Positions 1-25,470 of a stretch of DNA of 27,395 bases are shown in pieces. Below the pieces are notes generated by a model. It saw only the letters and a list, made by a program, of their open reading frames with translations. It did not search any database and was not told the origin of the DNA. Source of the DNA: Macrostomum lignano (Eukaryota); contig NIVC01005064.1 in the NCBI GenBank assembly GCA_002269645.1, forward strand, positions 1 through 27,395, given 5' to 3'. The position numbers and the translations under genes are program-made. The first letter of the stretch is position 1, and every line of letters starts with the position of its first letter.

Positions 1-2292
1 GGTTTGAAAATTGTTAGTGTGAGCTAATTAACGCTGTCAGCGCTTTTGTTTCGGTTTGGCTGATTTATTGTCATCATTTTCTCCGTGTGTTTTCTTTTTA
101 TAAATATAACTTTGATGCTAAACAAAACCCGTTTGGTGACTGCTTGTCTCTGATTTTGTCTCGTTCGGCTATTAAATTGCTGAAAAATATTAAACCGAGA
201 AACAATGGTTTGCTTTGGTTTATTTTACACCTGTAGGCGAGATGGATTTACATGAAGCGACTTCAATGATTGCTAATCCGACTGGGTCGCTTATTTTTCG
301 TATATCGATTGTGCATTTAGTAAGCTCTAGCCACGGATACTATAGTTAGCTCAGGGCCAGCACATTTGCGTGTAAGCTACTTTCAGTTCAGTAGTAAGTT
401 AAACCGAAGCATTTTAATGTATTTTAAAGCCAAAGCTCATTTATTGGCTCTTAACCCCCCTTAAACCCCCCTCCAACCGGCCGCCCCGCCCCAATTTTTT
501 TGCCTTTCTCGGAATTCCAGCCCAAAGCTGCCATTTACATTTCAGTGGACTGGCTAATGTACATTATTGCTGAACCAATTAGCAAGTTATTCACGCCAAA
601 GATCATATAAGATCTATGGTTTACGCCTGAAAGCTTGGCTTTTAAACCTGGGCTTTTAGGCCTTTTTTTATCAAATAGCTTATATATTCTTTGCTACTGA
701 ACCGAAAGTAGAAAACTGTTTTACTAAGTATATGTGCCTGTCTGTGTGGCCTATCTGGTCATTTTAGTATCTGTGGCACTAGCTAGACCGAACGCATAGC
801 TCTCTCAATGGGGTCTCGCCCTAGACACATTGTTGTGACCTTAGGATACACACCGGTCCCGCCAACAGCCAGGAAACTCAATCTTTTGTTGCCAAGGCTG
901 CATGCAGTGAGGCGCAGTGCTGATTGGCCGCACAGTGTTGTACTGAATATACTAGCGCTTGTGGGAAAAGTCCGACCTTGTGGCAAAATCGTTGAATATC
1001 TCTCGACAGTCCGGAGGGCTGGCCACTTGATTCTTGTTTGAGAAGGTGCGCAACAAAAAGTTACTCTGTGTTCTGGAATTCCGTGCGCCTGCGTTGCTCC
1101 GTTCCGGCGCAGCAAAAATTTCCAGCAGGGGTGATTCGATTCCCCCTTTGGTAGTTCCACGGGCGGAAAATGGCTTAACATTCCTACTGTTAATTAGCCC
1201 GACCTTTATTATTTCTTCCCTCATCGTCAAACTATTAATCATGAAAATAGCTTTTACATAGAGACACTTCTGATCTTGATGAAGACCGTCAGTCCGCTAC
1301 GCACAGCGTGCAATTAAAGATTGTGCATGCTAATGGCAGTCTATCACTAAACGAATTCACTACGGACTTCGCGACGCATTATCAGCTATATAGTATAGCT
1401 TTACTATGCAAATCAATCCTGATGGATTTCGGTCCAGTATTGGTTTTACGCCGGGAGCCAATTAATCCCCCCCCCCCCGAATCTGATCTGTGCGACCGAA
1501 TCTCTGTACGTGTATCTATAATACTCTCATAGCCCTCCCCCCCCCCAGTATGGGTAAGTGATAGCAAAGTCTGGCTGATAGACAATTTGCATTGCAAAGT
1601 GCTTGCTCTCTCTCAACTCTTATAGTCTTAGCGATGGAGAATCAAGGAGACTGAGAGGACTCGCATAGCTCTGCACTGGTTCCGTGCTCAGCATTGGTGG
1701 CGGTGGCTCTGCAGCCTCCCCCGAGCACACCCAATATCCCCCCGCTAGCTGACTGGCAGAGATTGCTCGTACAATGAGTCGGGGATCAGTACTGTGGCTG
1801 TCAGTTAGCAGAAGTGCCAGTGTCCAAATCGGATAAAGAGCCCCATGAGGTTTGGCTTGCAAATTCCCCTATTTGGGAATTTTCCGAGGGAAAGTCCAGC
1901 CCGAAGTGATCATCTCTCGGAGTAAACTGCTCTCGTGTCGGAAGTAGAGCTTGAGCTGCAACTGATCGACTCGCTAGCAGCTTGTACGCTGCTGTAGAAC
2001 TGCACTTTATATTCGGAATTTTTGGTGCGCTAGGGCGTGAGAGACAGCTAGACTGCCGTAGCTTTGCAGCTCTGCGGGATTCCGTGTCTGCTGTCTAACC
2101 GCCCTCCCTTCCCCTCACATCCCCCTCAGAGTGGCAGAGAAAAATTGCCGATTAACGCCAAAAGATTTGCATCTGTCAGATTTTCTGCCCCAGCCCCTCC
2201 AGTCCAACCCTACCTCCCTCGCCATTCCACACCCGACCAAGGAGGCCGAGAACCAGAAATTGGAGTAAGCAGCTCTTCCACAAACACCTCCC

Positions 2293-3246: not shown

Positions 3247-3399
3247 GTGAGAACTCCGTTACTATGATGCTATTGTTACCTGCTCCCGTTCTTTATTGAC
3301 TGACAACCTGCCGAATTCGTCACTTTTGCACATAGCTCTGCTACTCCCTTAATTTTCAAAATGTGCTGCATCACACCCTATTTTATTCCATGTCTACTC

Positions 3400-6300
3400 T
3401 CCATCTCACCCTGTCTATTCCACATCTCACCCTGTCTATTCCACATCTCACCCTGTCTATTCCACATCTCCCCCTGTCTATTCCACATCTCACCCTGTCT
3501 ATTCCACATCTCACCCTGTCTATTCCCCATCTCACCCTATCTATTTCCCATCTCACTCTATCTATTCCCCATCTCCCTCTGTCTCTCCCATCTCCTTCTG
3601 TCTATTCCCCATCTCCCTCTGTCTCTCCCATCTCCCTCTGTCTCTCCCCATCTCCTTCTGTCTATTCCCCATCTCCCTCTGTCTCTCCCATCTCCCTCTG
3701 TCTCTCCCCATCTCCTTCTGTCTATTCCCCATCTCCCTCTGTCTCTCCCATCTCCCTCTGTCTATTCCCCATCTCCCTCTGTCTCTCCCATCTCCCTCTG
3801 TCTATTCCCCATCTCCCTCTGTCTCTCCCATCTCCCTCTGTCTCTCCCCATCTCCCTCTGTCTATTCCCCATCTCCCTCTGTCTCTCCCATCTCCCTCTG
3901 TCTCTCCCATCTCCTTCTGTCTCTCCCATCTCCTTCTGTCTATTCCCCATCTCCCTCTGTCTATTCCCCATCTCCCTCTGTCTATTCCCCATCTCCCTCT
4001 GTCTCTCCCCATCTCCCTCTGTCTATTCCCCATCTCCCTCTGTCTCTCCCATCTCCCTCTGTCTATTCCCCATCTCCCTCTGTCTCTCCCATCTCCCTCT
4101 GTCTCTCCCATCTCCCTCTGTCTATTCCCCATCTCCCTCTGTCTCTCCCATCTCCCTCTGTCTCTCCCATCTCCTTCTGTCTCTCCCATCTCCTTCTGTC
4201 TATTCCCCATCTCCCTCTGTCTCTCCCATCTCCCTCTGTCTCTCCCATCTCCCTCTGTCTATTCCCCATCTCCCTCTGTCTCTCCCATCTCCTTCTGTCT
4301 ATTCCCCATCTCCCTCTGTCTCTCCCATCTCCCTCTGTCTCTCCCCATCTCCTTCTGTCTCTCCCATCTCCCTCTGTCTATTCCCCATCTCCCTCTGTCT
4401 CTCCCATCTTCCTCTGTCTATTCCCCATCTCCCTCTGTCTCTCCCATCTCCCTCTGTCTATTCCCCATCTCCCTCTGTCTCTCCCATCTCCTTCTGTCTA
4501 TTCCCCATCTCCCTCTGTCTATTCCCCATCTCCCTCTGTCTCTCCCATCTCCCTCTGTCTCTCCCATCTCCTTCTGTCTCTCCCATCTCCCTCTGTCTCT
4601 CCCATCTCCCTCTGTCTCTCCCATCTCCCTCTGTCTCTCCCATCTCCCTCTGTCTATTCCCCATCTCCCTCTGTCTCTCCCATCTCCTTCTGTCTATTCC
4701 CCATCTCCCTCTGTCTCTCCCATCTCCCTCTGTCTCTCCCATCTCCCTCTGTCTCTCCCATCTTCCTCTGTCTATTCCCCATCTCCCTCTGTCTCTCCCA
4801 TCTCCTTCTGTCTATTCCCCATCTCCCTCTGTCTCTCCCATCTCCCTCTGTCTCTCCCCATCTCCTTCTGTCTCTCCCATCTCCCTCTGTCTCTCCCATC
4901 TCCCTCTGTCTCTCCCATCTCCCTCTGTCTCTCCCATCTTCCTCTGTCTATTCCCATCTCCCTCTGTCTCTCCCATCTCCCTCTGTCTATTCCCCATCTC
5001 CCTCTGTCTCTCCCCATCTCCTTCTGTCTATTCCCCATCTCCCTCTGTCTCTCCCATCTTCCTCTGTCTATTCCCCATCTCCCTCTGTCTCTCCCATCTC
5101 CCTCTGTCTCTCCCATCTCCCTCTGTCTATTCCCCATCTCCTTCTGTCTCTCCCATCTCCCTCTGTCTATTCCCCATCTCCCTCTGTCTATTCCCCATCT
5201 CCCTCTGTCTCTCCCCATCTCCCTCTGTCTCTCCCATCTCCCTCTGTCTATTCCCCATCTCCCTCTGTCTCTCCCATCTCCCTCTGTCTCTCCTCATCTC
5301 CCTCTGTCTATTCCCCATCTCCCTCTGTCTCTCCCATCTCCCTCTGTCTATTCCCCATCTCCCTCTGTCTCTCCCATCTCCCTCTGTCTCTCCCATCTCC
5401 TTCTGTCTCTCCCATCTCCCTCTGTCTATTCCCCATCTCCCTCTGTCTATTCCCCATCTCCCTCTGTCTCTCCCCATCTCCCTCTGTCTCTCCCATCTCC
5501 CTCTGTCTATTCCCCATCTCCCTCTGTCTCTCCCATCTCCCTCTGTCTCTCCTCATCTCCCTCTGTCTATTCCCCATCTCCCTCTGTCTCTCCCATCTTC
5601 CTCTGTCTATTCCCCATCTCCCTCTGTCTCTCCCATCTCCCTCTGTCTATTCCCCATCTCCCTCTGTCTCTCCCATCTCCCTCTGTCTCTCCCATCTCCT
5701 TCTGTCTCTCCCATCTCCCTCTGTCTCTCCCATCTCCCTCTGTCTATTCCCCATCTCCCTCTGTCTATTCCCCATCTCCTTCTGTCTCTCCCATCTCCTT
5801 CTGTCTCTCCCATCTCCTTCTGTCTATTCCCCATCTCCCTCTGTCTCTCCCATCTCCCTCTGTCTATTCCCCATCTCCCTCTGTCTCTCCCATCTCCCTC
5901 TGTCTCTCCCATCTCCTTCTGTCTCTCCCATCTCCCTCTGTCTCTCCCATCTCCCTCTGTCTCTCCCATCTCCTTCTGTCTATTCCCCATCTCCCTCTGT
6001 CTATTCCCCATCTCCCTCTGTCTCTCCCATCTCCCTCTGTCTCTCCCCATCTCCTTCTGTCTCTCCCATCTCCTTCTGTCTCTCCCATCTCCCTCTGTCT
6101 ATTCCCCATCTCCCTCTGTCTCTCCTCATCTCCTTCTGTCTCTCCCATCTCCCTCTGTCTCTCCCATCTCCTTCTGTCTCTCCCATCTCCCTCTGTCTCT
6201 CCCATCTCCCTCTGTCTATTCCCCATCTCCCTCTGTCTCTCCCATCTCCCTCTGTCTCTCCCATCTCCCTCTGTCTCTCCCATCTCCCTCTGTCTATTCC

Positions 6301-8582
6301 CCATCTCCCTCTGTCTATTCCCCATCTCCCTCTGTCTCTCCCCATCTCCCTCTGTCTATTCCCCATCTCCCTCTGTCTCTCCCATCTCCCTCTGTCTATT
6401 CCCCATCTCCCTCTGTCTCTCCCATCTCCCTCTGTCTATTCCCCATCTCCCTCTGTCTCTCCCATCTCCCTCTGTCTCTCCCATCTCCTTCTGTCTCTCC
6501 CATCTCCCTCTGTCTCTCCCATCTCCCTCTGTCTATTCCCCATCTCCCTCTGTCTCTCCCATCTCCCTCTGTCTCTCCCATCTCCCTCTGTCTCTCCCAT
6601 CTCCCTCTGTCTATTCCCCATCTCCCTCTGTCTCTCCCATCTCCCTCTGTCTCTCCCATCTCCTTCTGTCTATTCCCCATCTCCCTCTGTCTCTCCCATC
6701 TCCTTCTGTCTATTCCCCATCTCCCTCTGTCTCTCCCATCTCCCTCTGTCTCTCCCATCTTCCTCTGTCTATTCCCCATCTCCCTCTGTCTCTCCCATCT
6801 CCCTCTGTCTCTCCCATCTCCTTCTGTCTATTCCCCATCTCCCTCTGTCTCTCCCATCTTCCTCTGTCTATTCCCCATCTCCCTCTGTCTCTCCCATCTC
6901 CCTCTGTCTATTCCCCATCTCCCTCTGTCTCTCCCATCTCCCTCTGTCTATTCCCCATCTCCCTCTGTCTCTCCCATCTTCCTCTGTCTATTCCCCATCT
7001 CCCTCTGTCTCTCCCATCTCCCTCTGTCTATTCCCCATCTCCCTCTGTCTCTCCCATCTCCCTCTGTCTATTCCCCATCTCCCTCTGTCTATTCCCCATC
7101 TCCCTCTGTCTCTCCCATCTCCTTCTGTCTCTCCCATCTCCCTCTGTCTATTCCCCATCTCCCTCTGTCTCTCCCATCTCCTTCTGTCTCTCCCATCTCC
7201 TTCTGTCTCTCCCATCTCCCTCTGTCTATTCCCCATCTCCTTCTGTCTCTCCCATCTCCCTCTGTCTCTCCCATCTCCCTCTGTCTATTCCCCATCTCCC
7301 TCTGTCTATTCCCCATCTCCTTCTGTCTCTCCCATCTCCTTCTGTCTCTCCCATCTCCTTCTGTCTATTCCCCATCTCCCTCTGTCTCTCCCATCTCCCT
7401 CTGTCTATTCCCCATCTCCCTCTGTCTATTCCCCATCTCCCTCTGTCTATTCCCCATCTCCCTCTGTCTCTCCCATCTCCCTCTGTCTATTCCCCATCTC
7501 CCTCTGTCTATTCCCCATCTCCTTCTGTCTATTCCCCATCTCCCTCTGTCTCTCCCATCTCCCTCTGTCTATTCCCCATCTCCTTCTGTCTCTCCCATCT
7601 CCTTCTGTCTATTCCCCATCTCCCTCTGTCTCTCCCATCTCCCTCTGTCTATTCCCCATCTCCCTCTGTCTATTCCCCATCTCCCTCTGTCTATTCCCCA
7701 TCTCCTTCTGTCTATTCCCCATCTCCCTCTGTCTCTCCCATCTCCCTCTGTCTCTCCCATCTCCTTCTGTCTCTCCCATCTCCCTCTGTCTCTCCCATCT
7801 CCCTCTGTCTATTCCCCATCTCCCTCTGTCTCTCCCATCTCCCTCTGTCTCTCCCATCTCCCTCTGTCTCTCCCATCTCCCTCTGTCTATTCCCCATCTC
7901 CCTCTGTCTATTCCCTATCTCCCTCTGTCTCTCCCCATCTCCCTCTGTCTCTCCCATCTCCCTCTGTCTATTCCCCATCTCCCTCTGTCTCTCCCCATCT
8001 CCCTCTGTCTCTCCCCATCTCCCTCTGTCTATTCCCCATCTCCCTCTGTCTCTCCCATCTCCCTCTGTCTCTCCTCATCTCCTTCTGTCTCTCCCATCTC
8101 CCTCTGTCTATTCCCCATCTCCCTCTGTCTCTCCCCATCTCCCTCTGTCTCTCCCCATCTCCCTCTGTCTATTCCCCATCTCCCTCTGTCTCTCCCATCT
8201 CCCTCTGTCTCTCCTCATCTCCTTCTGTCTATTCCCCATCTCACCCTATATATTCCCCATCTCACCCTATATATTCCCCATCTCACCCTATATATTCCCC
8301 ATCTCACCCTATATATTCCCCATCTAACCCTATATATTCCCCATCTCACCCTATCCATTCCCTATCTCATCCTATCTAATCCCCATCTCACCCTATATAT
8401 TCCCCATCTAACCCTATATATTCCCCATCTCACCCTATCCATTCCCTATCTCATCCTATCTAATCCCCATCTCACCCCGTCTATCCCCAATCTCGCCCTG
8501 TCTTTTCCCGTTCTCACCCTGTCTATTCCTCATCTCATCCTGTCTAATCCCCATTTCCCCTGTCTATCCGCTATCTCACCCT
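3400..8582 (+). repeat. ~5.2-kb pyrimidine-rich minisatellite in intron 1 (19/20/21-nt variants, roughly 260 units)
   Basis: Units are TCTATTCCCCATCTCCCTCTG (21), TCTCTCCCCATCTCCCTCTG (20) and TCTCTCCCATCTCCCTCTG (19). Diverged CTCACCCT-type units sit at both edges. Unit count is estimated from length. Confidence 0.98.
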
Positions 8583-10180: not shown

Positions 10181-10734
10181 GTGAGAAAATGTTGCCGGAA
10201 CTCTTCCGCCAAATCACATTCAGTCCCCGGCGTGCCTCTAGTCGATTTTCTATGGATTTTTTAGGAGAAAAATAGCATTGCACAGATTTAGTCTTTTTCT
10301 CAAAGTCCGCACAAGCGCATGACCCCGTCTTCGCTTGAGGTCATGCCGACAATAAATTGGTGCATAAGAAACCTTCTCAAGGAAAATCGGTTATAAATAA
10401 AATGCAACAGAAAAGTTCAACTGGGTGTTACAGTCAGTTTCTAGCAGAAAAAGGCTGATTGGAATCAGTGCCGGATCTGTAAACTCTAGCAGATTTTTCT
10501 TCCTGCATCGGCACGAAATGTAAATAAGACTACAGGACCGCAATGCACTGCTGGTTAACTGGAAATTATATTGCATTCTGCATATTGTTTTCATTCAGCC
10601 CCTGTCTGTCTTACTGACTGACTTTCAGTCTAGCATTGTCTTCTATCTCCTCTCCTGATCTCCGCTCTTCGTCTTTTGTCTCCATCTGCTTACATTCTTC
10701 TTTCCCATGGTTTCATGTCTTTCTGTCCGGCAGT

Positions 10735-10738
10735 GTCA

Positions 10739-10800
<62 letters not shown>

Positions 10801-10837
10801 GTGTCTGTCTGTGTGTCTGTCTGTCTGTCTGTCTGTG

Positions 10838-10880
<43 letters not shown>

Positions 10881-10881
10881 G

Positions 10882-10932
<51 letters not shown>

Positions 10933-10933
10933 G

Positions 10934-11012
<79 letters not shown>

Positions 11013-11047
11013 GTGTCTGTCTGTGTGTCTGTCTGTCTGTCTGTCTG
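10735..11047 (+). repeat. (CTGT)n tetranucleotide microsatellite with GTGT interruptions
   Basis: About 310 nt of TCTG repeats. Confidence 0.98.
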
Positions 11048-11584
11048 TGACTTTCTATCCCTCCCAATGCCTGTCTGTCAGTGCCTGTCTTTACCACTGT
11101 CTCTCTCAGAGTCTGTCTGTCATGCGGTGCAGTTCGGTAGTCCGGAACCATTTTCCACACCTCATTGCACCGATGTCTCTGTCGGAGTCTGAGTAGGAAT
11201 ATCAGCCCTGGCCGGCGCTACATTGAGCTCAATTTCGAATCTAATGAGTCTCATCTGCGGCCCGCTGCACTTAGCAATTCCGAACTCTGTCTAGAAAAGC
11301 TACAACTCTGTCTGCTGGGTATAGAGATATAGATGCATGTACTTTTTAACTGCTCGGATTTCTTCCAAGTGGAGAGAAAGGAAAGAAGATGCTCATAGCT
11401 AGGCACTGTAGTGCAGAATCCGTTGTTAAAGATGTGTATCGTAAATAATTTTCAAACAATTATGGAACGTAATTATTGTAGAAAATGAATTTCTTATTTA
11501 ATCTATACAATATGTTAGCTCCTAGCTTATCTGACTAAATTTTTTTTAATTTAGTACGTTGGTACTAGTATTGTGAGCATACAC

Positions 11585-16830: not shown

Positions 16831-17929
16831 GGCACGCCTTACGTGCGTGATTGGTTTAGATTGATTTGCACCCACTGTCCCAGCCGCGCTCGGAGATTTT
16901 GGACAATAAAAAACAGAACAGAAAAATTATCAATCAACTGCATGCCCTTCAAGACTTCTCCAAGAAGCTCCCCTCATCCAATTGACTTTCAAAGAAGAAG
17001 CTTTGCAATGCAATCGAATCCAAGAACAGATTGCAGCTATGGGGCTTCTGGAAATCTTGTTTTCTTTTCTTGGAAATCCCTAAGTCTCGCTTTCTACCCT
17101 CATTTCTCTCTTTCCCTTCTGACGCTTCATCAAGTTCACGGGGGCCTGGCATGAGGATCTAAGATTCCTTTGGGCTTCGAGCTTCTGGTCGCTAATTGCT
17201 TGTTGCTGGCCTCCGATGCGCGGAGGGTTTCCAAGTCCATTCTGGCAGGCCGGCCGAAATCCCCCTCCACCTCTTCCTGTGTCCATCCCGGCTTGCAATT
17301 CCCTCTGTTGAGTGACGCGTGAGCGACCTCCCCCCCACCCCCAGGATTTTGGCACTTTCAGTCAGTCTACTGAAAGAGAGAATTGTTGAATCGGGCGGCC
17401 CAACGCGAACACGTAGACCTGACAGAATCACACGCTTCCTTTCCAAGGGGAGCTTCTTTTTTCTCTCCGATGTTTCGCCTCAGCTCCCGTTTCCATATCT
17501 GTTTAGTGCATTAAAGTTTCCCGCGGTGTTGATGCGTCTGGCAAACAAGGGCGATAAACAGTGCTTCAGAAATGAAGATAGAGAGGAAATAATGGGGCCT
17601 ACAGATGAAGAAACAGGTTGCAGAAATATAATAGCTGTACTTTGCTCATTTGTCAGAGCCGTGATAACGTTTCTTGTCTGCCAGATAACTATAAAAGAAA
17701 GTTTTAGAAAATCTTTGGCTACTGTTATCAGCAAAAAACAACTTTCCAAGAGTAAATGTTTGAACTTTTTTTCGAATGGCATCCGCAGAGAGTCGAGTTA
17801 ATGAAAAAGTCGAAGTAAGGCATCGCTTTTTAACTTTGTACGTAGAGCTAATTTAAATTGGATTGAAATGCACTTAGTGTACTCAATATCCGCCTTAAAT
17901 TTTTATTGGTTCGAGGGTAGGAGAATTCA

Positions 17930-18214
17930 GGGGTGAGGGGCTACGACTCCGCATTCTCGACCTTAATTCTGATTGGCTGAAGCCACTCACGGAGGGGTTG
18001 AAAATTTGGGGGTGAGGGGCTGCGACTCCGCATTTCCGACCTTAATTCTGATTGGCTGAAGCCACTCACGGAGGGGTAGAAAATTTGGGGGTGAGGGGCT
18101 ACGACTCCACATTCCCGACCTTAATTCTGATTGGCTGAAGCCACTCACGGAGAGGTAGAGAAAATGGGAGTAAGGGGCTGCGACTCCGCATTGCTTATTT
18201 TATTGGCTGAAGCC
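17930..18214 (+). repeat. 79-nt tandem repeat x~3.6, each unit containing CTGATTGGCTGA
   Basis: CGACTCC recurs at 17944, 18023, 18102 and 18181 (period 79). Confidence 0.93.
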
Positions 18215-18451: not shown

Positions 18452-18798
18452 GTATGTACGCGTGCATCGCTACTCATGGCAGTAGTAGTATAGCAGTATA
18501 GCACTATTGGAGACGGTAGTTCTGGGCGTTTTCTGCTTGGATTTCTTGTAGAATGCATCGAATAGGAAGCATACGTAAATTGTATCCGTCGAAAACTGCA
18601 TTCGAATCGAGCACATAGCCCTGGAAATTAGGCAGAAATAAGTAAGAGAAAAAAACCGCGGATAAAATCTTTATTATATCAGGAAATGTTTTATTTAGCT
18701 GCTCTCATATCAAGGTAAACTACTCGTAGTTCGGGTTCCCAGCCGTTACATTTTATAATTTACCGATAAACGGCTTCTCCGTTACTATATTACTACAG

Positions 18799-19055
18799 GC
18801 ATCACCACCGTTCTCACCATGACTACAATCAGCACAGGCGTTCGTTCCTCCCTGCCTCGTATCAGCTACGTAAAAGCCATAGACATTTACCTGGTGATGT
18901 GTTTTGTGTTTGTGTTCGCCGCTCTGCTGGAGTACGCCATGGTGAATTACACTTATTGGGGCGCCAGGGCCAAGCGGAAGGCCAAACGGTTGAGAGACGC
19001 CAGCAGCGGAAATAACACACGAGGCAACTGCTCTGGAGACTTCATTGACAACTCG
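18799..19055 (+). CDS. Lcch3: LCCH3-type subunit, exon 7 (M2, M3, start of intracellular loop)
   Basis: Acceptor ctacAG|GC, donor TCG|GTGAGG (phase 0). Reads [54 protein letters not shown], the diagnostic LCCH3/beta-type M2-M3 sequence. Confidence 0.97.
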
Positions 19056-19593
19056 GTGAGGCCTCCTGCTAGGGATAAAAAATTCTCTGTTTAACCGGCT
19101 TAGTTTTAGTAGTATTTTACGAGCTAGAAGTATTTGAGAGCTTAACTAGTTGGATTATAATTGGCTTGCGTACTTTTCTGGGTAGAGTAGAATTTTCGAA
19201 ACCAAAGCTTTGGGCTCTGATTGGCTGACAGGGAGTAGAAAAGAAGGTCTGAGTCAACGAGATGGGTTCTGATTGGCTGACATGGGGTATAGAGAACTTT
19301 TTTTAGCCAATAAAGTCGGACTCGGATTGGCTGACCCTAAAGCAGCATTTTAGATCCTAGAAACGGTGTTTCTTATTGGTATAGCCAGATCGGCGTTCAT
19401 ATGGCTTTATCTGTCTGGTTTCAGAACACAGAGCTTTTTTAGTGCGTAGCCAAAACACCATGAGTGTCAAAATTAGGGCTCTAAAACCTTTTAAAGAAGG
19501 ATTTAACTTAACGTAACCTCATCCGCATGCCTTAGTACTTTTCCTGTCAGCTAAGTTGTTCTCTGATTGTCTCCATCAAACTCCTCTCTGCAG

Positions 19594-20175
19594 CACTCGG
19601 GCGTTGATCTGAACAATCAGCGCATGTCGCCGATAATTGGCCTACGAATTCGACGCTTGAATCAGCAGCTGCACCAGCAGCAGCAGCAGCAGCAAAGCGA
19701 AGACGAAAGCCGAGAAGAGGAGACCAGCATTCAGTCGTGCCCTCAGCAGCAGCAGCAGCAGCCGGAGCCGCCGCCTCCATCATCCGTGCCCGTCTACCCG
19801 ATGAGTCCCCATGTGCCCTACATCAGCCGGCCGGGCTGCTACCTGGGCGCCAGTGGATCTGGTCTCGGCGGCAGCAGCGGCGGCAGCGGAGGCGTCGGCG
19901 GCGGCATTGCAGGCGTTGGTCGCAGCTACCTTCGCCAACGTCGCGTAACCGCTGGCAGCCTTGGTGGGGGCGGCTTCGACAGGCGGCATCAGCACCAGCG
20001 AGCGGCTGCCGCGGTCATCGGGCAGCAGCTACGACAGCGGGCGTTGCAGATCCGGGCGCGAATGCCGCGCATCAAGGATGTGAACAAGATTGACAAGTAC
20101 TCCAGGCTGGCCTTCCCGTCGCTGTTCGTCCTGTTCAACCTGTGCTACTGGTGCTTCTACCTGCTCACCGGCTGA
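19594..20175 (+). CDS. Lcch3: LCCH3-type subunit, exon 8 (intracellular loop, M4, stop)
   Basis: Phase-0 acceptor ctcctctctgcAG|CAC is in frame with exon 7. Ends IKDVNKIDKYSRLAFPSLFVLFNLCYWCFYLLTG-TGA. The 5' boundary is the least certain part. Confidence 0.9.
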   Translation, partial: HSGVDLNNQRMSPIIGLRIRRLNQQLHQQQQQQQSEDESREEETSIQSCPQQQQQQPEPPPPSSVPVYPMSPHVPYISRPGCYLGASGSGLGGSSGGSGGVGGGIAGVGRSYLRQRRVTAGSLGGGGFDRRHQHQRAAAAVIGQQLRQRALQIRARMPRIKDVNKIDKYSRLAFPSLFVLFNLCYWCFYLLTG

Positions 20176-20381: not shown

Positions 20382-21770
20382 GCCTTCAGTCCTAAGCAGT
20401 TGAATTCGGCCATTTTACGGAATATTTTAGTCCACAGTGCTTTTATACACTATACCAATACAGCATAGATTTCTGGCTATTGTGGACTGCTCGTGGCTTT
20501 TCAGTCGTGTTACTTTTTCTCAAACAGAACAGATTGGCATTGCAATGTTAACTCAAGAGCCATTCGAGCGTAAAGTAACATGTAATTAGTTAACAAATTT
20601 TTTATTTAGTATATTTTCTTACAATCGCTTGAGCCTTCAAAATAGTACGTGGCAATTACGTTATAACAAATTAAGCTACAATTAACTATATTACGGCTTA
20701 ATCGCTACCGTGCTGACAAGTCATAAGTTCATACTCATGACAAAGATTCAGTTCCATTATTTATGTCTACGTCAGACACAAGACTCATAAAATTTGTAAG
20801 TGGATGATTAAACAGAATGAACGCAAAACTGCTGTAAATTCTCTCTGATGACATGTTTTAGTAGATTAATGTTTCTATTTAACTGCAAAATTTGACAAAA
20901 TTTATTTCATTTACGAAGCAACCTTCACACACATTGACAGATGAAGTTTGAGTTTCCCAATAAAATGGCTTTACATGAATAGTATATTTATATGCATGAT
21001 TATCACTTTTTAATTTACGAAACCGTGACAGAATATACGACTAATTATAGCTGCACTTTCTAATCCACTATGATCCTTAGTTAGGTATTGAAAATATATA
21101 AAACAGAAACTCATATTACACAGGAAACTAATTGAGTTAGGAGTATTATAACAAAATAATTAAATAAACATATTATTAGGTACGGAGAATTTCAAGGTTT
21201 TTTCTGTTTTTTGTAAAAAAATCTGCGCAATATGCCTCTACGCTAGATTATTGTTCTAACAAAAATTTGAAGACATATTTTACTGATGATAGTGACGCTC
21301 GTACTACACAAAAAGCAATAATGTAGCTTACACAAACGTATACACAATAATAGAGTAAAATAAGCAGTAATTGATTAAGAATTGGATAATAATGAACCCT
21401 TTTCACAAGTTTTACACCATTCGACCCTACGCATATAGATATGAATATAGCATCAGCGACAGACATCGATATAGCCTCGATGATAGGCTTCATAGAACTT
21501 GATACACATGTACTCGTAAATTTATTCAGAGCTAATTATGGCATGGATGTCAAGCCAAGATACAAGGCCAAGTGCAACTGCCAACTTCCGCGACGAACTG
21601 ACCAAGCCGATAGTATAGTTAAGACTGCTGCTGTCGGAGAGCTTTGAGTTGCCTCTACCTGCTTCTCAATGTGACTCTCTCGATGGAAGCAACGCGACAC
21701 TCCGGTCTCTAATTGAACGCGTATCAGTGCTTTACCAGAGAGCTGAAGTGTTTTTAACGCCAACTTTGAT

Positions 21771-22855
21771 TCATATGAACTGCGATTTACTCGTGCATTT
21801 CAGAAATGACGAACGAGACTTGGCTTGGTTCGGCCACATTCCATAAGATGACGTCACGGAGTCAGCGCGTCGCTTGCACAGTCGCTTCGCGGAGCACGAG
21901 TCGGACTTGGAGCTGTTGCCGCCATCGACATCCAGACGCGCTTTCACGGACGCCTTCATGTTTCGATGAATTGCTTCTTCAGTTTCAGCCGCTGTGAGGT
22001 TCAGGCACAGAGGGAGATGTCTAAACTCCCAGGTTGTAGGCTCAGGTGTCGGGCTGCAGTTGTACCTCTGCTGTCTGTCCCTCGCCATCTCCGAATAGTA
22101 GCAGTGAGCCTCGCTGTAGCTGAACGCATCTGCGGCGCCGTTGTACGGGTTCAAGAACAGAACTGGGTCGTCGTGTTTCTCAACGCACTGGCCGGGAAAG
22201 TCCGCCGGTGTCATCTGGGCATCTTGCATTGCGATGGAGACGTCGTAGGCTCGACCGGGACCCAGGCTGATCACATTAGAGGTGAATCGAGACGGGTAGT
22301 GACCTCTGGGCGTCAGGTAGAGATACATTCCGCTGCCTTTATCGAACCCGATCGGATTCTCCAGGTTCCAGTCGAATGGATATAATGTTATCTGATGACC
22401 AGATACGACAACAGACATTGTTGGAAGCCGGTCTGTATGGTTTGAAAACAGGCCAAGCTTATCGAAGTCAAAGAAGTAAGGATCGAGAAGCAGGTCGAGC
22501 TGCAATCTGTTGTTCGTATTCTGCATCCGAGATAACTCAGCATCGGTGAGGGCAAGCTTGAAGCACTTCAGATGGTTCGGGTGGAACAGCGTCTCTACCG
22601 CGATCGGGGAATTCAGACTGCGATCTGAGCCTGCACTGAAGATTCCGTAGTTTCCGTAGAATGTCTGCAGCTTTCTCTGACCCACAATGTCCGCCAGAGT
22701 TCTGTAGGGCAGAGACTGGATCAAGCTTGTTGGCCGAAGTTCGCGCAGTGTTGTGTTTTCACTCTCCGACGCATTCAGAGATCCGAGAGCGGCATCGAAT
22801 GCAGTCTGAGCAGCATCGACCGGTATGTTCACCTGGTCCGCCTCTGACCTGTTCA
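21771..22855 (-). CDS. Uninterrupted ectodomain reading frame of the DEG/ENaC gene
   Basis: The ORF track shows 353 aa open (21771..22832), and the frame extends back to the MITE target site (RLNRSEADQVNIP...). It contains the finger/palm/knuckle/thumb region but no TM segments. Confidence 0.7.
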
Positions 22856-22863
22856 GTCGGTAG

Positions 22864-23368
22864 CAGGGGCGTCGCCATGGATTTTATGGTGGGGGGGACA
22901 AAGCCAATAATTATACTAGTACGTGTACATGACAAAATTCTTACATGTACATTATTTTCAGAATCGGTGTTGTCAGCACTCATTTTGGCGCCGCAGGCAT
23001 TCATTTTAGCGCCGCAGGCACTCATTTTAGCGCCGCAGGTTACTCATTTTGGCGCCGCAGCCACTCATTTTAGCGCCGCAGGCACTCATTTTAGCGCCGC
23101 AGGCACTCATTTTAGCGCCGCAGGCACTCATTTTAGCGCCGCAGGTTACTCATTTTGGCGCCGCAGCCACTCATTTTAGCGCCGCAGGCACTCATTTTAG
23201 CGCCGCAGGCACTCATTTTAGCGCCGCAGGCACTCATTTTAGCGCCGCAAGCACTATGTATTGTCGCCCTGCAGAAAAATTATTGATTTCCATAACGGTT
23301 CACAGGGTGGAGTGGGGGGACAAAGAATTGGCCCCCCTGTCCCCCCCCCCCCGTTGGCGACGCCGCTG
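22864..23368. mobile_element. Non-autonomous hAT-type DNA transposon (MITE), 505 bp
   Basis: TIRs CAGGGGCGTCGCCA (22864-22877) and TGGCGACGCCGCTG (23355-23368), one mismatch. Perfect 8-bp TSD GTCGGTAG at 22856-22863 and 23369-23376. An 8-bp TSD with CAG termini is characteristic of hAT elements. Confidence 0.92.
22977..23251 (+). repeat. 21-nt tandem repeat (CACTCATTTTAGCGCCGCAGG) x13 inside the MITE
   Basis: I counted 13 units. Two 22-nt variants (TTACTCATTTTGGCGCCGCAGC) start at 23040 and 23146. Confidence 0.95.
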
Positions 23369-23659
23369 GTCGGTAGATAAACGAGCCAGCGGCTTGGAGA
23401 CTGTTGCAAAAGTAGACATCGGGAACTCGAATGGAACCTTTTCCGCTTGGAACTCTGACCTTACGCTCGGACTGTTCAGGCGTCGAATGTAGACGGTACA
23501 GGTGTTTAGCAGAAGGCCCAGGAAGCTCAAGAATGCCAGAAGCCAGAAGATCCTCTGCACAACGGTCCTCTGCTTGCAGGGTCAATATGTTGTATTTTCT
23601 TCACAATGAAGAACTCGCGTGCGGTCAGATCAGTAACCGGAGAGTTTTCCCGCGTCAAA

Positions 23660-23893
23660 TTAGTACCTCAGCTGTTTCCAGACTTGGCGTATGCGGATAC
23701 AGCTTTGCATCGAAGCTGAGGGAAGTATTTTGAGGGCACAGAAGCTCAGAATCCCAAAAGCCATGGATACAGATGATCCTCTGCACAACGGTGCGACTTG
23801 CAGGGGCCTCACGGCCGATGGTGTGAGCTGTGTGCAGTGGTGTTCGCCACGGATTTTTTCACTATCCCGGACAGAGAGGCGCTGGGCGTCCAT
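23660..23893 (-). pseudogene. Degenerate second copy of the DEG/ENaC N-terminal/TM1 module
   Basis: ACCGTTGTGCAGAGGATC and the following GCTTYTGG..TTC.TGAGCTTC recur 223 nt apart (near 23775 and 23550). This copy keeps ANTTAH but carries several indels. Confidence 0.7.
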
Positions 23894-24712: not shown

Positions 24713-25470
24713 ATATGCATGCACGTTGCAAGGACGACTGGAGTAGAAGGACAGGAAACCTCGTTTCTTAGAAAATTTTAGAAGGCAGGTTTTCCTGAAA
24801 AAATACACTATGGAGATAGGAAGTTTTCATTTTTTTACAACAAAAATTGTTAATTGCTTTTGATAGGAGACAGTTCATCTTTTGATATGTTGTGCCTTTC
24901 TTATTGCTCGATTGATATTCTGATATTCATACAGCTTTTCGTTCAAAAATTAGGATTCTAAGCATACAAACCTTAGAGATTTAGTATATTTAGATGTTAA
25001 TTTTTTATTCTACGTACATTTGCACGTGTCTTGTGCCTAAAACCATTAAAATTGCACGGCCGGCTCGTCTCTTTGGCCTTATGATTCTATTTTATCATTC
25101 TTAGCTGACTGTGTAACAAATGTGTAACAGAGATGATAAAATAGGTTCATAAAACCATAGATTGGAGCTGTGCTATGCATTTTTATGAGTTTTAGGTACA
25201 GCAAAAAACGTTGAATAAAAATTTACATAGAATACTAATTTTTTGAACGAAAAGCTTTACGATGGATAGAGCAATAAGAAAGGCACAACATATCAAAAGA
25301 TGAACACTGGATCTGCCTCCTATCAAAAGCAATAACAATTTTTGTGCTGAAAAAATGAAAACTTCCTATCTCCGTAGCGTATTTTTTTCGGGAAAACCTG
25401 CTTTCTAAAATTTTCTAAAAAACGTGGTTTTCCGTCCTTCTACTTAAGTCGTCCTTGGCACGTTGCATAT
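24713..25470. mobile_element. ~760-bp imperfect palindrome (foldback/MITE-like element)
   Basis: The arms match in inverted orientation nearly to the centre. 24873-24909 is the exact reverse complement of 25269-25305 (37 bp). Further matches: 24932-24960 vs 25228-25256 and 25079-25101 vs 25131-25152. Confidence 0.8.

What the first reader, a model, noticed from the sequence alone, without database searches (positions are those of the whole stretch)
22856..23376. Recent hAT MITE inserted in a channel exon; precise removal restores the reading frame
Deleting 22864-23368 plus one GTCGGTAG copy joins ...TTT ATC TAC CGA C to TG AAC AGG TCA GAG..., giving FCNSLQAAGSFIYRLNRSEADQVNIPVDAAQ in frame with the 353-aa ORF. 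The TSD is perfect and the TIRs differ at 1 of 14 positions, so the insertion is young and the family may still be active. This is the clearest single event in the window, and the family may be uncatalogued.
Basis: partly seen in the sequence, partly recalled or inferred. Interest (0 to 1): 0.7.

Follow-up and report, generated by a model that had tools for sequence, protein, structure and literature searches.

The report
Small transposon inside flatworm channel gene
A 505-base non-coding "cut-and-paste" transposon sits inside the coding sequence of a sodium-channel-family gene of a Macrostomum-like flatworm; this is a real but ordinary insertion, and the gene has other defects, so removing the insert would not give back a working channel gene.

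Summary
A 505-bp element (22864-23368) has 14-nt inverted ends matching at 13 of 14 positions. It is flanked by a perfect 8-bp duplication (GTCGGTAG) and carries a 21-bp x13 tandem array. It interrupts a DEG/ENaC (Pfam ASC) exon on the minus strand. Flatworm homologues align without a gap across the junction, and two M. lignano paralogues have no intron there, so it is an insertion and not an intron.

The family is real. A homologous element with the same end, the same 21-bp array and the same right subterminal region lies in Macrostomum lignano. Five metagenome contigs carry the same two-part terminus, and two of these are complete ~200-bp copies with 8-bp duplications.

hAT is the best superfamily guess, from the 8-bp duplication and CAGGG ends. 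No transposase-bearing partner was found, so a P-like origin is not excluded.

Frame restoration is only local. The first transmembrane segment lies in another frame (1-nt shift at about 23420-23424). No intact second transmembrane segment was found, only a remnant with stop codons. The gene is probably a pseudogene, unless these are assembly errors. Youth and current activity are not shown. This is an ordinary finding of low interest.

The parts
22856..22863 (.). Target-site duplication, left copy (GTCGGTAG)
   Evidence: Identical to 23369-23376 (family D7).
22864..23368 (.). The inserted element, 505 bp. It is non-coding and MITE-like, probably of the hAT superfamily.
   Evidence: Bounded by inverted ends and the 8-bp duplication. 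Its only long ORFs read through the tandem array. A homologous element lies in M. lignano at L009 about 5100-5891.
22864..22877 (+). Left terminal inverted repeat, CAGGGGCGTCGCCA
   Evidence: pair I1. It equals the consensus terminus seen in five metagenome contigs.
22888..22903 (+). Left subterminal G-run motif, GGTGGGGGGGACAAAG
   Evidence: pairs I2 and D3. The motif GGGGGGGACA lies 7-13 nt inside the terminus in the aligned ends, and is degenerate at three left ends.
22976..23255 (.). Internal 21-bp tandem array, about 13 copies, with a 106-bp higher-order period
   Evidence: period 21, 13.2 copies, 92% matches; period 106 at 98%. The same unit occurs 28.6 times in the M. lignano copy.
23338..23352 (-). 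Right subterminal C-run, the inverted copy of the G-run motif
   Evidence: pairs I2 and I3.
23355..23368 (-). Right terminal inverted repeat (TGGCGACGCCGCTG). It has one mismatch to the left end and to the family consensus.
   Evidence: pair I1.
23369..23376 (.). Target-site duplication, right copy (GTCGGTAG)
   Evidence: family D7.
21771..22863 (-). Host DEG/ENaC exon downstream of the insert. It encodes the extracellular domain and is open to the stop at 21771-21773.
   Evidence: Pfam ASC. A profile of flatworm homologues gives E = 1.6e-72 over profile positions 93-429. tblastn matches.
23377..23423 (-). Host coding sequence just upstream of the insert (DVYFCNSLQAAGSFIYR), in the same frame as the downstream exon
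   Evidence: tblastn places P0003 residues 85-99 here. Profile positions 74-93 match here. Alignment.
23420..23569 (-). Host TM1-coding stretch (QRIFWLLAFLSFLGLL...VPFEFP), read in a different frame
   Evidence: Pfam ASC positions 16-67. tblastn frame -2 here against frame -1 for the rest. Profile positions 28-77, E = 1.4e-8.
23420..23424 (-). Site of the 1-nt frame change between FEFP and DVYFCN, at a GGG run
   Evidence: The two frames overlap here. Homologues read ...FEFPDLY... without a gap. It is either a real frameshift or a homopolymer assembly error.
21540..21690 (-). Weak remnant of the pre-TM2 and TM2 region (RVTLRSR*...LYYRLGQFVAEVGS, then LALYLGLTSMP*), with stops and a frame change
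   Evidence: tblastn with the C-terminus of P0001, E = 0.17, collinear and on the right strand. Three-frame view. Not significant on its own (E = 11).

Best explanation
A non-autonomous class II (cut-and-paste) DNA transposon of 505 bp inserted into the coding sequence of a lineage-specific DEG/ENaC (ASC family) gene. The genome belongs to a flatworm closely related to Macrostomum lignano. Integration duplicated the 8-bp target GTCGGTAG.

The element has no coding capacity. It would have to be moved in trans by a transposase that recognises its two-part terminus: CAGGGGCGTCGCCA, a 7-13 nt spacer, then GGGGGGGACA. The 8-bp duplication and the CAGGG termini point to the hAT superfamily. The internal 21-bp tandem array is an inherited feature of the family.

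The insert truncates the host frame at a stop 30 codons into the element. Removing it rejoins a conserved, homologue-supported peptide, but the gene is also out of frame upstream and lacks an intact TM2. The locus is therefore most likely a pseudogene.

Shown: the anatomy, the exon location, the existence of the family, and the other gene defects. Inferred: the hAT assignment, mobilisation in trans, and the order of events.
For: Anatomy. The configuration is absent from 200 shuffles.

Host identity: Pfam ASC. Only 8 hits among 1.84 billion representatives; the six looked up are Macrostomum lignano proteins or a Logan contig.

The insert lies in continuous coding sequence:
- tblastn places P0003 residues 85-99 at 23423-23379 and residues 103-427 at 22856-21816.
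- Profile position 93 is reached on both sides of the insert.
- The alignment is gap-free across the junction.
- The M. lignano paralogue P0004 is intronless, and exon 1 of P0003 covers residues 1-368.

Family:
- In M. lignano L009, the left end is 79% identical, including CAGGGGTATCGCCA, and the right subterminal region is 75% identical. The same 21-bp unit occurs 28.6 times. The same insertion is present in the duplicated locus L013.
- Five metagenome contigs carry the identical terminus.
- L002 (70-279) and L004 (257-459) are complete elements of about 200 bp. Each has an inverted terminus, and their 8-bp flanking repeats match at 6 of 8 and 7 of 8 positions.
- The terminus pattern has no match in 596 Gb of prokaryotic genomes or in viral contigs.

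Source organism: the neighbouring Cys-loop receptor gene is syntenic with M. lignano NIVC01000350.1, at 82-88% nucleotide identity in the exon matches.
Against: - No autonomous copy and no transposase with these ends was found, so the superfamily is inferred from the duplication length and terminal bases only.
- The target sites fit neither hAT sub-pattern consistently. Only the window's GTCGGTAG fits nTnnnnAn, and none fits the Buster pattern nnnTAnnn (pattern from PMC3517528; nTnnnnAn from my own knowledge).
- No second copy lies in the window, and the source genome could not be searched.
- The metagenome hits were selected with the terminus pattern itself. Only their opposite ends and flanking repeats count as independent evidence.
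- The pseudogene reading depends on a single-base frame change at a GGG run, which could be an assembly error, and on a weak TM2 remnant (E = 0.17).
Confidence: 0.78

Rival explanations
1. The element is a MITE of another superfamily that also makes 7-9-bp duplications, such as P, Merlin, MULE or Zisupton, and not hAT.
For: The family consensus terminus CAGGG also fits the P-type pattern CANRG (pattern from my own knowledge). Target sites do not consistently fit hAT sub-patterns. No hAT transposase was linked to these ends.
Against: An 8-bp duplication together with short inverted ends starting CAGGGG is the classic hAT signature. The hAT MITE Mar has CAG(G/A)GGTAGGC and 8-bp duplications (PMC3517528). 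By my own knowledge, Merlin and MULE termini usually start with G.
Confidence: 0.13
2. The 513-nt segment works as an intron, either old or transposon-derived ('introner'), so the gene is not interrupted at the RNA level.
For: 513 is a multiple of 3. One in-frame cryptic pair exists, with donor GGC|GTCGCC inside the end repeat and acceptor AACAG|GTC in the host. It would swap LNR for PAA.
Against: No offset within the duplication gives GT..AG for exact removal (sequence). The cryptic donor matches the consensus only at GT. Two paralogues have no intron at this position. The boundaries are those of a transposon, with inverted ends and a duplication.
Confidence: 0.04
3. The insertion itself inactivated a working gene recently. 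On this reading the upstream frame change is an assembly error and the true TM2 exon lies elsewhere.
For: 1,090 nt of coding sequence downstream of the insert remain open and score E = 1.6e-72. The frame change sits in a homopolymer. The M. lignano paralogue P0003 has a 616-nt intron before its last exon, so a separate TM2 exon is conceivable.
Against: No TM2-like exon was found anywhere in the window on the correct strand, by tblastn, by profile or by motif search. The only collinear candidate carries two stops and a frame change, and it ends four codons after the position that aligns with the homologues' G-x-S motif.
Confidence: 0.25
4. The structure is a chance arrangement of repeats or an assembly artefact.
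For: None beyond the abundance of repeats in the window.
Against: There were 0 such structures in 200 shuffles. Homologous elements exist in independent assemblies.
Confidence: 0.01

Closest known systems
hAT-superfamily MITEs, for example Mar of Drosophila willistoni (PMC3517528)
   Same: Short and non-coding, with 8-bp target-site duplications. The short inverted ends begin CAGGGG (Mar: CAG(G/A)GGTAGGC). Insertions occur in or near genes.
   Different: It has an internal 21-bp tandem array and a G-run subterminal motif. The target site does not match the Buster pattern nnnTAnnn reported for Mar. No relic or autonomous full-length copy has been identified.
The homologous element in Macrostomum lignano (GCA_002269645.1, NIVC01000110.1; locus L009 about 5100-5891) and its duplicate in NIVC01003469.1 (L013)
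   Same: The left terminus and subterminal region are 79% identical, the 21-bp repeat unit is the same, and the right subterminal region is 75% identical.
   Different: The array is longer (28.6 units). The last ~37 bp, meaning the C-run and the right end repeat, are missing or deleted. The flanking 8-mers match at only 5-6 of 8 positions. It lies between genes, and it is older, being shared by two duplicated loci.
MITEs of about 200 bp in metagenome contigs Ga0049107_10207311 and Ga0049107_10279637 (L002, L004)
   Same: The same 14-nt terminus, a G-run motif at similar spacing (degenerate at their left ends) and 8-bp flanking repeats.
   Different: The internal sequence is unrelated and there is no tandem array. 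The host organisms are unknown.
P-superfamily non-autonomous elements
   Same: 7-8-bp duplications and CANRG-type termini (from my own knowledge).
   Different: Nothing here links the element to a THAP-domain P transposase. This was not tested.
Introners (transposon-derived introns)
   Same: A MITE-like element inside coding sequence whose length plus duplication is a multiple of 3.
   Different: There are no canonical splice sites at or within the duplication, so exact splicing is impossible.

Membership tests
hAT superfamily (non-autonomous member) | 8-bp target-site duplication | tested here: met
   Perfect GTCGGTAG on both sides. Relatives L002 and L004 match at 6/8 and 7/8 at the exact flanks.
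hAT superfamily (non-autonomous member) | Short terminal inverted repeats beginning YARNG | tested here: met
   The ends are CAGGG... and CAGCG..., 14 nt, matching at 13/14. The YARNG pattern is from my own knowledge.
hAT superfamily (non-autonomous member) | An autonomous relative with the same ends that encodes a hAT transposase (BED finger, DDE core, hAT C-terminal dimerisation domain) | not testable with these tools
   The source genome is not searchable. None was seen in 131 kb of M. lignano loci or in the metagenome loci.
hAT superfamily (non-autonomous member) | Target-site pattern nTnnnnAn (Ac type) or nnnTAnnn (Buster type) | tested here: inconclusive
   GTCGGTAG fits the Ac type. The L002 and L004 sites fit neither (Buster pattern from PMC3517528).
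MITE | Small (under about 800 bp), no coding capacity, inverted ends plus duplication | tested here: met
   505 bp. The only ORFs are translations of the tandem array, and they have no homologues.
MITE | Many copies within one genome | tested here: inconclusive
   There is no second copy in the 27-kb window. One homologous insertion, present in two duplicated loci, was found in 131 kb of M. lignano sampled. The source genome was not available.
DEG/ENaC (Pfam ASC, PF00858) channel gene (the host) | Significant match to the family profile | tested here: met
   38.6 bits against a cut-off of 23.6. The profile of flatworm homologues gives E = 1.6e-72.
DEG/ENaC (Pfam ASC, PF00858) channel gene (the host) | An intact ORF with TM1, the extracellular domain and TM2 with its G-x-S filter | tested here: not met
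   TM1 is in another frame. The TM2 region is present only as a remnant with stops. The N-terminal HG-motif exon was not found.
Spliceosomal intron (rival reading) | GT..AG boundaries, and the position shared with paralogues | tested here: not met
   No GT at any offset within the duplication. P0003 and P0004 have no intron there.

The most novel reading that the evidence does not exclude
The element belongs to an uncatalogued hAT-like MITE group. The group is defined by a two-part terminus, CAGGGGCGTCGCCA, then 7-13 nt, then GGGGGGGACA. It occurs in Macrostomum flatworms and in unidentified organisms sampled by metagenomes. On this reading the group is still mobile in the source species, so this copy would be a segregating, possibly reversible null allele of a lineage-specific DEG/ENaC gene.
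Probability: 0.2. Interest if true: 0.35.

Novelty: new member of a known kind. Interest (0 to 1): 0.2.

Why it matters
- It gives a clean, homologue-verified example of a DNA-transposon insertion in a coding exon of a macrostomid flatworm.
- It defines the termini of a MITE family shared with the model species M. lignano. That is useful for repeat annotation and for avoiding false gene models. The M. lignano copy overlaps a called 99-residue 'gene' in L009.
- If an active transposase for these ends exists, it could be of interest as a genetic tool in Macrostomum, but nothing here shows activity.
- Biologically, this is one more decayed paralogue in an expanded channel family.

Tried and rejected
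- Word-indexed protein searches found nothing for the composite channel protein or for the element's longest ORF.
- Exact-product look-ups of window ORFs found no matching contigs, so neither an empty-site allele nor the source species could be retrieved.
- A full-text search for the terminus sequence returned only unrelated primers.
- A literature search on Macrostomum, hAT and MITE gave no description of this family.
- The terminus pattern gave no match in prokaryotic genomes or viral contigs. This serves as a negative control.
- Rfam and tRNA scans of the window were empty.
- A second 'duplication plus inverted ends' hit at 24772/25407 was rejected. It lies inside the arms of a long palindrome.
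- Tiny introns of 10-39 nt that might bridge the TM1 frame change were rejected as too short or as frame-neutral (sequence).
- The M. lignano locus syntenic for the neighbouring Cys-loop gene has no ASC gene within 10 kb, so no orthologous empty site could be compared.

Full report
**Observation.**
- GTCGGTAG lies at 22856-22863 and again at 23369-23376.
- Directly inside these copies are CAGGGGCGTCGCCA (22864-22877) and its inverted copy TGGCGACGCCGCTG (23355-23368), matching at 13 of 14 positions.
- The 505-bp interior holds a 21-bp tandem array (22976-23255). It has 13.2 copies at 92% matches and a 106-bp higher-order period at 98%.
- The interior also holds a G-run motif, GGGGGGGACA. It occurs near the left end, and near the right end in both orientations, where the two copies can pair as a hairpin.
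- A scan for a perfect 8-bp duplication abutting 14-nt inverted ends with at most one mismatch found this site. It found nothing in 200 block shuffles.
- The only other hit, at 24772/25407, lies inside the arms of a long palindrome and is an artefact.

**Empty site.** I joined the flanks by removing 22864-23376. Insert plus duplication is 513 nt, a multiple of 3. Even so, the host frame meets a stop 30 codons into the element, at 23280-23282.

**The host gene.**
- The ORF matches Pfam ASC (amiloride-sensitive sodium channel, DEG/ENaC) at 38.6 bits against a cut-off of 23.6.
- An exhaustive HMMER search of 1.84 billion representatives gave only 8 hits.
- Of the six looked up, five are Macrostomum lignano proteins (28% identity or less for those covering the insertion site, P0003 and P0004). 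The sixth is a 52%-identical product on a Logan contig from run SRR31628394.
- The neighbouring gene, whose last exon is at 19567-20175 on the plus strand, is a Cys-loop ligand-gated channel.
- That gene's exons are syntenic with M. lignano contig NIVC01000350.1. Nucleotide identity is 82-88% in the exon matches, and amino-acid identity is 91% across the M2-M3 region.
- The window therefore comes from a close relative of M. lignano, not from M. lignano itself.

**Insertion, not intron.**
- tblastn places P0003 residues 85-99 at 23423-23379 and residues 103-427 at 22856-21816.
- A profile built from nine flatworm homologues reaches position 93 on both sides of the insert.
- A multiple alignment is gap-free across the junction: GSFIYR|LNRSEADQVN aligns with GSYPHDLSQADAELIN, GSIPYTLQENEAKIVN and others.
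- The M. lignano paralogue P0004 is intronless, and exon 1 of P0003 covers residues 1-368, so neither has an intron at this position.
- No offset within the duplication offers GT..AG, so exact splicing is impossible.
- One in-frame cryptic donor and acceptor pair exists, but its donor matches the consensus only at GT.

**The element belongs to a family.**
- No second copy lies in the window.
- A scan of metagenome contigs for the right-end pattern (C-run, 0-20 nt, then terminus) returned five loci.
- In two of them the element is complete. L002 70-279 has flanks CGTTTAAT and CGTTTGTT. L004 257-459 has flanks AAAAGCAC and AAATGCAC.
- Both carry an inverted copy of the terminus about 200 bp away and near-identical 8-bp flanks. 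Neither feature was required by the search.
- The aligned ends share CAGGGGCGTCGCCA, a 7-13 nt spacer and GGGGGGGACA. Three left ends (L002, L004 and a second L005 element) are degenerate in both parts.
- The pattern is absent from 596 Gb of prokaryotic genomes and from viral contigs.
- I scanned 131 kb of M. lignano DNA that had been fetched around channel paralogues. It contains a true homologue in L009 at about 5100-5891, in the reverse orientation.
  - Its left end is 79% identical, including CAGGGGTATCGCCA.
  - It carries the same 21-bp unit, here 28.6 times.
  - Its right subterminal region is homologous.
  - The last ~37 bp, meaning the C-run and the right end repeat, are missing.
- The same insertion is present in the duplicated locus L013, so that copy is old.
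- The tandem array is therefore a family trait and not a local expansion.

**Superfamily.**
- An 8-bp duplication with short ends beginning CAGGG is the hAT signature.
- The hAT MITE Mar has 8-bp duplications and CAG(G/A)GGTAGGC ends (PMC3517528).
- The window's target fits the Ac-type pattern nTnnnnAn (my own knowledge), but the two metagenome targets fit neither that pattern nor the Buster pattern.
- No transposase-encoding copy was found, so hAT is likely but unproven. A P-like origin, with 7-8-bp duplications and CANRG ends, remains possible.

**The gene is otherwise damaged.**
- The TM1-coding stretch (QRIFWLLAFLSFLGLL...EKVPFEFP, 23569-23420) is in a different frame from DVYFCN... (23423 onward). 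Homologues read FEFPDLY without a gap.
- The shift is one nucleotide, at a GGG run at 23421-23423. It is either a real frameshift or a homopolymer assembly error.
- Downstream of WPNQ (about 21822) the frame stops at 21771.
- The only TM2-like sequence is a collinear remnant at 21690-21540. It has two stops and a frame change, and it ends four codons after the position that aligns with the homologues' G-x-S motif.
- That remnant is not significant on its own.
- No N-terminal HG-motif exon was found.
- Removing the element would therefore not give a full-length channel ORF from this sequence.
- The 1,090-nt open stretch suggests that any decay is recent or uneven. The order of events cannot be decided here.

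**Age and activity.**
- A perfect 8-bp duplication only bounds divergence loosely.
- The single mismatch between the ends is a departure of the right end from the family consensus.
- Without other copies from the source genome, neither youth nor activity can be assessed.

**Verdict.** This is a genuine MITE-like insertion, probably hAT, in a DEG/ENaC coding exon of a Macrostomum-like flatworm, and it has relatives in M. lignano. It is an ordinary event in a repeat-rich genome and probably lies in a pseudogene.

Noticed in passing
window 23640-23830 (minus strand): A diverged second copy of the start of the TM1 exon. The motif CCCTGCAAG, then a few bases, then ACCGTTGTGCAGAGGATC occurs at about 23805-23765 and again at about 23585-23545. 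The upstream copy ends at a donor-like GCTGAG|GTACTA. It may be a duplicated or alternative first coding exon, or a relic.
   Followed up: partly
window 24723-25463: A long inverted repeat, like a foldback element. Its arms extend to about 240 nt at 74-98% complementarity and surround an AT-rich core. It mimics a duplication plus inverted ends in automated scans.
   Followed up: partly
window 3391-8242: A 4.85-kb satellite with a 19-20-bp unit, TGTCTCTCCCCATCTCCCTC, about 244 copies. It produces spurious ORFs of about 1,650 aa.
   Followed up: no
window 18798-19007 and 19567-20175 (plus strand): Exons of a Cys-loop ligand-gated channel gene, covering the M2-M3 region and the loop plus M4. They are syntenic with M. 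lignano BOX15_Mlig005480g1 on NIVC01000350.1 and convergent with the DEG/ENaC gene.
   Followed up: yes
window 362-776: This stretch matches part of the M. lignano Cys-loop gene (L007 10348-10756) in the reverse orientation at 72% identity. A second Cys-loop paralogue or fragment probably lies on the minus strand at the window's start.
   Followed up: no
window 10734-11048; L007 19280-19784: A (TGTC)n microsatellite. The same repeat motif occurs in the M. lignano locus.
   Followed up: no
window 17915-18192: A 79-bp tandem repeat, 3.5 copies at 89% matches, of unknown nature.
   Followed up: no
L009 4943-6195: A called 99-residue 'gene' in the M. lignano assembly overlaps the MITE copy and its tandem array. 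It is probably a spurious gene model.
   Followed up: no
L005 705-951 and 984-1446: This metagenome contig carries several adjacent elements with related termini (CAGGGGCGTCGCTG..., CAGGGGCGGATCCA...). This hints at a cluster or nesting of related MITEs.
   Followed up: partly
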